Positions 1,342 to 1,424 of a stretch of DNA of 63,698 nt are shown in pieces (position 1 is the stretch's first letter; each line of letters starts with the position of its first letter). The position numbers and the translations under genes are program-made. The stretch covers positions 31,944,552-32,008,249 of the forward strand of contig NC_068997.1 of the NCBI RefSeq assembly GCF_001194135.2. Direction: 5' to 3'. The stretch comes from Octopus bimaculoides. Lineage: Eukaryota. The notes under the pieces were generated by a model that ran no database searches, was not told where the DNA came from, and saw nothing but the letters and a program-made list of their open reading frames with translations.

Positions 1342-1424
1342 AGAAGCAACGCACTGACTCAAGAGCTGAGAGTTTTGTTTGTGCATTGGCACTTTCTCGG
1401 CCCTTGAGTCACTTTGTTGCTTCT
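1342..1424 (+). ncRNA. candidate pre/pri-miRNA-like hairpin
   Basis: Hand pairing gives a 31-position stem (25 Watson-Crick, 3 G-U, 3 mismatches) with a 21-nt loop, in unique sequence between microsatellites. Confidence 0.4.

What the first reader, a model, noticed from the sequence alone, without database searches (positions are those of the whole stretch)
1342..1424. Pre-miRNA-like hairpin in a unique island between microsatellites
Seen: AGAAGCAACGCACTGACTCAAGAGCTGAGAG pairs with TTCTCGGCCCTTGAGTCACTTTGTTGCTTCT over 31 positions (25 WC, 3 G-U, 3 mismatches on +; only 1 G-U on -, so + is favoured). The 21-nt loop contains UGUG. Known: coleoid cephalopods have many lineage-specific miRNA families, and this geometry fits Drosha/Dicer substrates. 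Inference: candidate arms are roughly ACUGACUCAAGAGCUGAGAGU (5p) and UUUCUCGGCCCUUGAGUCACUU (3p). I do not recognise a known family and saw no downstream CNNC motif.
Basis: partly seen in the sequence, partly recalled or inferred. Interest (0 to 1): 0.7.

Follow-up and report, generated by a model that had tools for sequence, protein, structure and literature searches.

The report
Ordinary inverted repeat, miRNA status unproven
The 83-base hairpin is real and not a chance match, but it is one of several inverted repeats in this repeat-rich intergenic DNA, and nothing beyond its shape suggests it makes a microRNA.

Summary
Positions 1342-1372 and 1394-1424 form a 31-position inverted repeat (25 Watson-Crick pairs, 3 G-U, 3 mismatches on the + strand) around a 21-nt spacer. 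It sits in a unique island (about 1323-1463) between microsatellites. It folds at -41.4 kcal/mol on + and -41.3 on -, and no shuffle folds as well.

The miRNA reading could not be tested directly, because no small-RNA data and no related genome were reachable. All indirect evidence is neutral or negative:
- The two strands fold equally well.
- The stem is 31 bp rather than about 35, and the predicted Drosha cut falls in a 3x3 internal loop.
- Neither strand has a CNNC or a basal UG motif.
- No Rfam family matches.
- None of 18 plausible seed-site 7-mers belongs to an annotated Octopus vulgaris miRNA in the stored parts of the published tables.
- The same 64 kb holds three other, unrelated inverted repeats of equal or better quality, against 0.003 expected by chance.

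With about 160 miRNA genes per octopus genome, the prior for such a hairpin is well under 1%. The most likely reading is a neutral, decaying short inverted duplication about 13 kb downstream of a SKI-like gene. I put the probability of a bona fide miRNA at about 3%.

The parts
1342..1372 (.). 5' arm of the inverted repeat (31 nt)
   Evidence: It pairs with 1394-1424 at 25 Watson-Crick and 3 G-U positions on the + strand. It contains TGACTCA at 1355-1361, a heptamer that occurs at chance frequency in the window.
1373..1393 (.). 21-nt non-palindromic spacer (apical loop if transcribed); contains UGU/UGUG on + and a 4-bp mini-stem, GUGC/GCAC
   Evidence: The mini-stem axis is offset 3.5 nt from the main axis of symmetry, so the spacer is not a decayed part of the palindrome.
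1394..1424 (.). 3' arm of the inverted repeat (31 nt)
   Evidence: It is 81% identical to the reverse complement of the 5' arm (4 transitions, 2 transversions).
1323..1463 (.). Unique-sequence island holding the repeat
   Evidence: It is bounded by the (AT)n/(TG)n/(ATAC)n block at 1195-1322 and by (GATA)n at 1464-1506. No target-site duplication abuts the repeat: the left flank ends ...TTTAGC and the right flank begins TTCCTG...
1353..1374 (+). Hypothetical 5p arm if processed from the + strand (ACUGACUCAAGAGCUGAGAGUU); geometry only
   Evidence: Inferred from an 11-bp lower stem. The start lies in the 3x3 internal loop at 1352-1354/1412-1414. Its 7-mer target site, GAGTCAG, is listed as a 'Non-seed kmer' in Data S2 of PMC9699675.
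1394..1415 (+). Hypothetical 3p arm if processed from the + strand (UUCUCGGCCCUUGAGUCACUUU); geometry only
   Evidence: Inferred as the partner that gives 2-nt 3' overhangs with 1353-1374. The sites GCCGAGA, CCGAGAA, GGCCGAG and CGAGAAA are absent from the stored Data S2 and S3.

Best explanation
This is a single-copy, partly decayed short inverted duplication: 31-bp arms, 81% complementary, with a 21-bp spacer. It lies in intergenic, microsatellite- and SINE-rich DNA about 13 kb downstream of a SKI-like gene. It most likely arose from a local DNA event, namely fold-back or template switching during replication or repair. AT-rich microsatellite surroundings favour such events. It has since drifted neutrally. 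Any transcript through it, on either strand, would fold into a stable hairpin, but that follows from the DNA symmetry and is not evidence of a gene.

Shown: the repeat exists, is not chance, is single-copy in the window, folds equally on both strands, and has unrelated siblings nearby. Inferred: how it formed and that it is neutral.
For: (1) The repeat is far beyond chance (0.003 expected per window). Yet four such repeats lie in the complex sequence of this one window, centred at 1384, 22172, 24446 and 61550. They share no sequence with one another. So this DNA produces inverted repeats often and independently.

(2) By folding energy, the candidate is only third of four loci at or below -42 kcal/mol in about 39 kb of complex sequence.

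(3) The arms are 81% identical. That is within the range of the window's interspersed repeat copies, which are 65-85% identical to each other. No selection is needed to explain the pairing that remains.

(4) The substitutions show no significant strand bias: 3 wobble-preserving transitions on + against 1 on -. Folding energies are equal on the two strands.

(5) There is no match to any curated RNA family and no neighbouring known miRNA.

(6) No plausible seed matches an annotated Octopus vulgaris miRNA in the stored data.

(7) Prior: about 162-164 miRNA genes per octopus genome. Extrapolating about one comparable hairpin per 10 kb gives on the order of 10^5 per genome.
Against: Neutrality is inferred, not shown, because no orthologous sequence could be obtained. 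The hairpin does have pre-miRNA-like proportions: an imperfect stem, a 21-nt loop with UGU, and MFEI 1.06. In this it differs from its siblings, which are near-perfect palindromes with 3-nt loops or a 190-bp foldback. Cephalopods are reported to have gained many lineage-specific miRNAs (PMC9699675), and that paper says its catalogue is an underestimate.
Confidence: 0.8

Rival explanations
1. It is the remnant of a miniature inverted-repeat or foldback transposable element. The two arms would be its terminal inverted repeats, and related copies would be scattered through the genome.
For: The architecture is terminal inverted repeats around a short spacer. The window is dense in interspersed repeats and holds a clear foldback of about 190 bp at 24346-24544.
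Against: No target-site duplication abuts the arms. No second copy or fragment exists in 64 kb that otherwise holds many repeat families. The arms do not resemble the other inverted repeats. Exact-pattern scans of viral, metagenome and prokaryote collections were empty, though these are uninformative for eukaryotic repeats.
Confidence: 0.12
2. It is a genuine, lineage-specific miRNA gene. A Pol II transcript would be cut by Drosha about 11 bp above the base and then by Dicer. On the + strand this would give roughly 1353-1374 (5p) and 1394-1415 (3p), or the equivalents on the - strand.
For: The hairpin is stable, isolated and imperfect, with single-stranded flanks and a loop of at least 8 nt. 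More than 16 bp pair between the arms, and there is an apical UGU on +. Many novel miRNA families are reported in coleoids, and the catalogue is said to be incomplete.
Against: The stem is 31 bp, not about 35. Rulers measured from the basal and apical junctions disagree by 2-4 nt, and the cut site falls in a 3x3 internal loop. Neither strand has a CNNC or basal UG. The strand is undetermined. No Rfam family matches. GAGTCAG is explicitly a non-seed k-mer, and 17 other candidate site 7-mers are not attached to any miRNA in the roughly 2,900 stored rows of Data S3. The background of equally good hairpins is high. No expression or conservation evidence could be obtained.
Confidence: 0.03
3. It is a structured segment of a longer transcript and acts as a double-stranded RNA substrate, for example for ADAR editing or as an endogenous siRNA source. 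The transcript could be a very long SKI-like 3' UTR on the - strand, or an unannotated + strand RNA that includes the exon-like stretch at 2028-2133.
For: The duplex forms equally well on both strands. A splice-flanked 35-codon open frame lies 600 bp downstream on +. The SKI-like gene is upstream on -.
Against: It lies 13 kb beyond the SKI stop codon. The exon-like stretch has no homologue. There is no transcript evidence. A 31-bp imperfect duplex is short for siRNA production.
Confidence: 0.03
4. It is a DNA-level regulatory element, with paired AP-1-like heptamers (TGACTCA at 1355, TGAGTCA at 1405) in inverted orientation.
For: Each arm carries the heptamer.
Against: The window has 7 such heptamers against 7.8 expected by chance, and the second copy follows automatically from the inverted repeat.
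Confidence: 0.02

Closest known systems
Short genomic inverted repeats or palindromes formed by fold-back or template-switch replication and repair
   Same: It has two arms in inverted orientation with a short spacer, is single-copy, lacks a target-site duplication, lies next to AT-rich microsatellites, and has unrelated siblings nearby.
   Different: The siblings at 22172 and 61550 are younger (near-perfect, 3-nt spacer). This one has a 21-nt spacer and 19% arm divergence. How it formed is inferred, not demonstrated.
Animal pre-miRNA hairpins (MirGeneDB criteria; Microprocessor model of Fang and Bartel 2015 and Auyeung et al. 2013, cited from my own knowledge)
   Same: It is an imperfect hairpin of about 83 nt at -0.50 kcal/mol per nt, with a loop of at least 8 nt, more than 16 paired positions between the arms, and an apical UGU.
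   Different: The stem is 31 bp rather than about 35. The predicted cut lies in an internal loop. It has no CNNC or basal UG, no family match, and no evidence of expression, processing or conservation.
MITE or foldback transposable elements
   Same: It has inverted terminal arms with a short internal region.
   Different: It has no target-site duplication and no other copy in the window.

Membership tests
Canonical animal miRNA gene | Hairpin with at least 16 complementary positions between the two arms | tested here: met
   28 of 31 positions pair on + (25 Watson-Crick, 3 G-U).
Canonical animal miRNA gene | Terminal loop of at least 8 nt | tested here: inconclusive
   The spacer is 21 nt. In the minimum-energy fold it forms a 4-bp mini-stem with a 4-nt loop next to an 8/1 internal loop.
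Canonical animal miRNA gene | Stem of about 35 bp between the basal and apical junctions, so that both Drosha rulers agree | tested here: not met
   The stem is 31 bp. The basal ruler puts the 5p start at about 1353-1355 and the apical ruler at about 1351. The site lies in a 3x3 internal loop. This criterion comes from vertebrate data, so it weakens the claim but does not exclude it.
Canonical animal miRNA gene | Reads of 20-26 nt from both arms, with uniform 5' ends and 2-nt 3' overhangs | not testable with these tools
   No small-RNA data are available. The geometry would allow 1353-1374 paired with 1394-1415.
Canonical animal miRNA gene | Conservation of the arms above the loop and flanks in related species | not testable with these tools
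   No related genome was reachable. Abalone and scallop SKI loci show nothing, as expected at that distance.
Canonical animal miRNA gene | Primary-sequence processing motifs (basal UG, apical UGU/GUG, downstream CNNC); supportive, not strictly defining | tested here: not met
   Only the apical UGU (1376-1378, + strand) is present. There is no CNNC at +16 to +18 and no basal UG on either strand.
Any described miRNA or RNA family (Rfam 15) | Covariance-model score at or above the family's gathering threshold | tested here: not met
   The best match on the hairpin is MIR1861 at 23 bits against a threshold of 88. The whole-window scan at gathering thresholds returned 0 hits.
Annotated Octopus vulgaris miRNAs (PMC9699675) | Seed-site k-mer listed for an annotated miRNA | tested here: not met
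   I tested 18 candidate 7-mers covering both strands, both arms and registers of plus or minus 1-2 nt. None is attached to a miRNA name, and GAGTCAG is labelled 'Non-seed kmer'. Caveats: the files are truncated, only dominant arms are listed, and the window's species is unverified.
Mirtron | Hairpin ends coincide with GU...AG splice sites | tested here: not met
   On both strands the hairpin begins AGAAGC and ends GCUUCU.
MITE or foldback transposon | Target-site duplication flanking the terminal inverted repeats | tested here: not met
   The flanks are ...TTTAGC and TTCCTG....
MITE or foldback transposon | Multiple dispersed copies | tested here: inconclusive
   There are no copies in the 64-kb window. 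The genome-wide count is not testable here.

The most novel reading that the evidence does not exclude
The hairpin is a young, species- or genus-restricted miRNA, or a Dicer-substrate hairpin. It would have been born from a local inverted duplication and caught at an early stage, before processing motifs such as CNNC evolved.
Probability: 0.03. Interest if true: 0.4.

Novelty: already known. Interest (0 to 1): 0.1.

Why it matters
If it were a real miRNA, it would add one more lineage-specific gene to a group already reported to have gained about 90 novel families. It would also be an example of miRNA birth from an inverted duplication. That would be of modest interest. As it stands, the value of the result is cautionary. 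In this genome, hairpins of pre-miRNA quality occur roughly every 10-16 kb of non-microsatellite sequence, so hairpin shape alone should not be used to nominate miRNA candidates.

Tried and rejected
- **Rfam.** The scan of 1000-1800 at E up to 10 returned only low-complexity artefacts on the flanking microsatellites (mir-3149, mir-297 and others, all below threshold). The hairpin itself scored only noise. The whole-window scan returned nothing.
- **Full-text literature.** Searches for 12-18-nt substrings of the arms found only unrelated human and rat sequences.
- **Supplements of PMC9699675.** They hold no precursor sequences, so I used the seed-site tables instead.
- **Exon-like stretch 2028-2133.** Using it as an anchor for orthologous loci failed: first the query was too short, then it had no homologue.
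- **SKI-like gene as an anchor.** Only class-level relatives were found. Their loci show no similarity to the hairpin or to the region downstream of SKI.
- **Exact look-ups of window ORFs.** The ORFs spanning the hairpin and the SKI last exon are not on record.
- **Exact DNA pattern scans.** Metagenome (twice), prokaryote-genome and viral collections returned 0 matches.
- **Chimeric six-frame query with a SINE control peptide.** Nothing scored. This shows the lineage is absent, so the negative carries no information.
- **SINE core in the literature.** Searching for it to confirm an octopus origin found no paper.
- **AP-1 site idea.** Rejected, because the heptamer is at chance frequency.
- **tRNA scan.** Empty.
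- **Not used.** The exhaustive protein-representative search, structure prediction and covariance-model building could not bear on a single non-coding hairpin with no relatives.

Full report
**The observation**

The sequence at 1342-1424 is as described. The 5' arm (1342-1372) and the 3' arm (1394-1424) are inverted copies that differ at 6 of 31 positions: four transitions and two transversions. On the + strand this gives 25 Watson-Crick pairs, 3 G-U pairs and 3 mismatches. On the - strand it gives 25 Watson-Crick pairs, 1 G-U pair and 5 mismatches. The 21-nt spacer (1373-1393) contains UGUG.

RNAfold gives -41.4 kcal/mol on + (z = -6.6) and -41.3 on - (z = -8.1). None of 200 dinucleotide shuffles is as stable. 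The helix survives the addition of 20, 40 or 80 nt of flank on either strand, with pair probabilities near 1.0.

A repeat with at least 25 of 31 Watson-Crick pairs and a spacer up to 60 nt is expected 0.003 times in a window of this size and composition. So it is a real inverted duplication, not a coincidence.

It sits in about 140 nt of unique sequence, between the (AT)n/(TG)n/(ATAC)n block ending near 1322 and (GATA)n starting at 1464. Neither arm recurs in the window at up to 3 mismatches.

**Context**

The window is a draft eukaryotic scaffold with 11 N gaps and 36% G+C. It is full of microsatellites and of interspersed repeats whose copies are 65-85% identical to each other.

A SKI/SnoN-like gene runs on the minus strand. 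Its c-SKI Smad4-binding exon lies at about 52518-52832 (Pfam E = 5e-35). Further exons lie at about 18.9-17.6 kb, and the last coding exon ends near 14393. The hairpin is therefore about 13 kb downstream of that gene.

A 35-codon open frame with canonical splice signals lies at 2028-2133 on the + strand, but it has no detectable homologue.

The best SKI relatives in a collection of 5.8 billion proteins are bivalve and gastropod proteins. They are about 60% identical over the conserved domain and about 33% identical over the C-terminal region. So the source is a mollusc from a lineage that the collection does not hold. From memory, I recognise two of the interspersed repeats as octopus SINE-like elements. 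I could not confirm this, so the cephalopod origin remains likely but unverified.

**Is it a miRNA?**

None of the decisive tests could be run. No small-RNA data and no related genome are reachable. ORFs from the window are not on record. Exact pattern scans of the metagenome, prokaryote and viral collections are empty. The abalone and scallop SKI loci carry nothing similar. A chimeric six-frame query that included a SINE control peptide found nothing at all, so the lineage is simply missing.

What can be tested is neutral or negative:
- **Strand.** The two strands fold equally well. The 3:1 split of wobble-preserving transitions is not significant, so the strand is undetermined.
- **Stem geometry.** The stem is 31 bp rather than the roughly 35 bp that the Microprocessor prefers (my own knowledge of Fang and Bartel 2015). 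The basal and apical rulers disagree by 2-4 nt. The predicted 5p start lies in a 3x3 internal loop.
- **Motifs.** Neither strand has a CNNC at +16 to +18 or a basal UG. Only an apical UGU is present on +.
- **Known families.** No Rfam family matches the hairpin. The sub-threshold miRNA 'hits' nearby lie on the microsatellites.
- **Annotated octopus miRNAs.** The octopus miRNA paper's tables list 8-mer target sites; I calibrated this with Mir-124, which appears as GTGCCTTA. None of 18 candidate site 7-mers, covering both strands, both arms and neighbouring registers, is attached to any miRNA in the roughly 2,900 stored rows. The files are truncated, so this is a moderate negative, not a proof.

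**Background**

A sliding 90-nt fold of the whole window shows four loci at or below -42 kcal/mol in about 39 kb of non-microsatellite sequence. They start at 24401 (-60.3), 22131 (-45.9), 1341 (the candidate, -42.4) and 42611 (-42.0).

A direct scan for inverted repeats finds four in complex sequence, centred at 1384, 22172, 24446 and 61550, against 0.003 expected. They share no sequence with one another. So this DNA generates inverted repeats repeatedly and independently.

Extrapolated to a genome of a few gigabases, that is on the order of 10^5 comparable hairpins. The two octopus genomes have 162-164 robustly annotated miRNA genes each. The prior for any one such hairpin is therefore well below 1%.

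The 81% identity between the arms lies within the 65-85% range of the window's neutral repeat copies. No selection is needed to explain the surviving pairing.

**Conclusion**

The most likely reading (about 0.8) is a neutral, partly decayed local inverted duplication. A transposon relic (about 0.12) is less likely, because there is no target-site duplication and no second copy in a repeat-dense window. A bona fide miRNA remains possible at about 3%. The other readings (a double-stranded RNA segment of a long transcript, or paired AP-1-like sites) have no specific support. The AP-1-like heptamer occurs at chance frequency, 7 observed against 7.8 expected.

The finding is ordinary. Its main use is as a warning that hairpin shape alone nominates far too many candidates in this genome.

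Noticed in passing
window 14393-52832, minus strand: A SKI/SnoN-like gene. Its c-SKI Smad4-binding exon lies at about 52518-52832 (Pfam PF08782, E = 5e-35). Coiled-coil exons lie at about 18571-18984, 18021-18317 and 17654-18001, and the last exon at 14393-14848. The N-terminal Ski/Sno DHD exon was not seen and may lie beyond the window or in a gap. The closest proteins found are bivalve and gastropod SKI, only about 60% identical over the domain.
   Followed up: partly
window 24346-24544: A foldback of about 190 bp with 90-nt arms that are 90% complementary (-60 kcal/mol for the central 90 nt). It is flanked by (AT)n on the left and (ATT)n on the right and looks MITE-like. It has no sequence in common with the candidate.
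   Followed up: partly
window 22148-22196 and 61526-61574: Two near-perfect palindromes of about 23 bp with 3-nt centres. They are unrelated to each other and to the candidate, and appear to be young inverted duplications.
   Followed up: partly
window 42611-42700, + strand: An imperfect hairpin of miRNA-like proportions (-42.0 kcal/mol, k-mer diversity 0.84). On structure alone it is as good a 'candidate' as the flagged one.
   Followed up: no
window 33443-33654, 45957-46178, 8563-8774, 19314-19521, 4188-4330; also 14962-15323, 36608-36931, 55474-55787, 60146-60518: At least two families of SINE-like interspersed repeats, with copies 65-85% identical. One contains ...GTTCAAATTCCGCCAAGGTCGACTTTGCCTTTC...ATAAATTAAGTACCAG... 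I recognise them from memory as octopus-type elements, but a literature search found no match. ARAGORN finds no intact tRNA.
   Followed up: partly
window 2028-2133, + strand: An exon-like stretch: ttttag|ACA...AAG|gtgaat, with 35 open codons (TVGCYLKEIYGCYFYQVEQYTERFPQQLLKVEGLE). It has no homologue in the protein collection and no Pfam hit. It may be chance or an unannotated exon.
   Followed up: partly
window 15558-15854 (+) and 32701-33057 (+): Open frames that resemble the C-terminal part of LINE reverse-transcriptase ORF2 (for example ...RLRWNGHVARMDEDR...GRGGPTKTWDEVVKHDL...DRDLWKYAV). They lie inside SKI introns. The resemblance is from memory, and Pfam gave no hit.
   Followed up: no
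window 1181-1323 and other microsatellites: (AT)n/(AC)n/(TATG)n tracts give sub-threshold Rfam 'miRNA' matches (mir-3149 at 63 bits against a threshold of 100, mir-297, mir-568 and others). They also dominate any naive hairpin ranking. These are low-complexity artefacts.
   Followed up: yes
protein collection as a whole: No protein from a close relative of this organism is present. The best SKI hit is only 63% identical over the conserved domain, ORFs from the window are not on record, and the SINE control peptide found nothing. Negative homology results for this window therefore carry little weight.
   Followed up: yes
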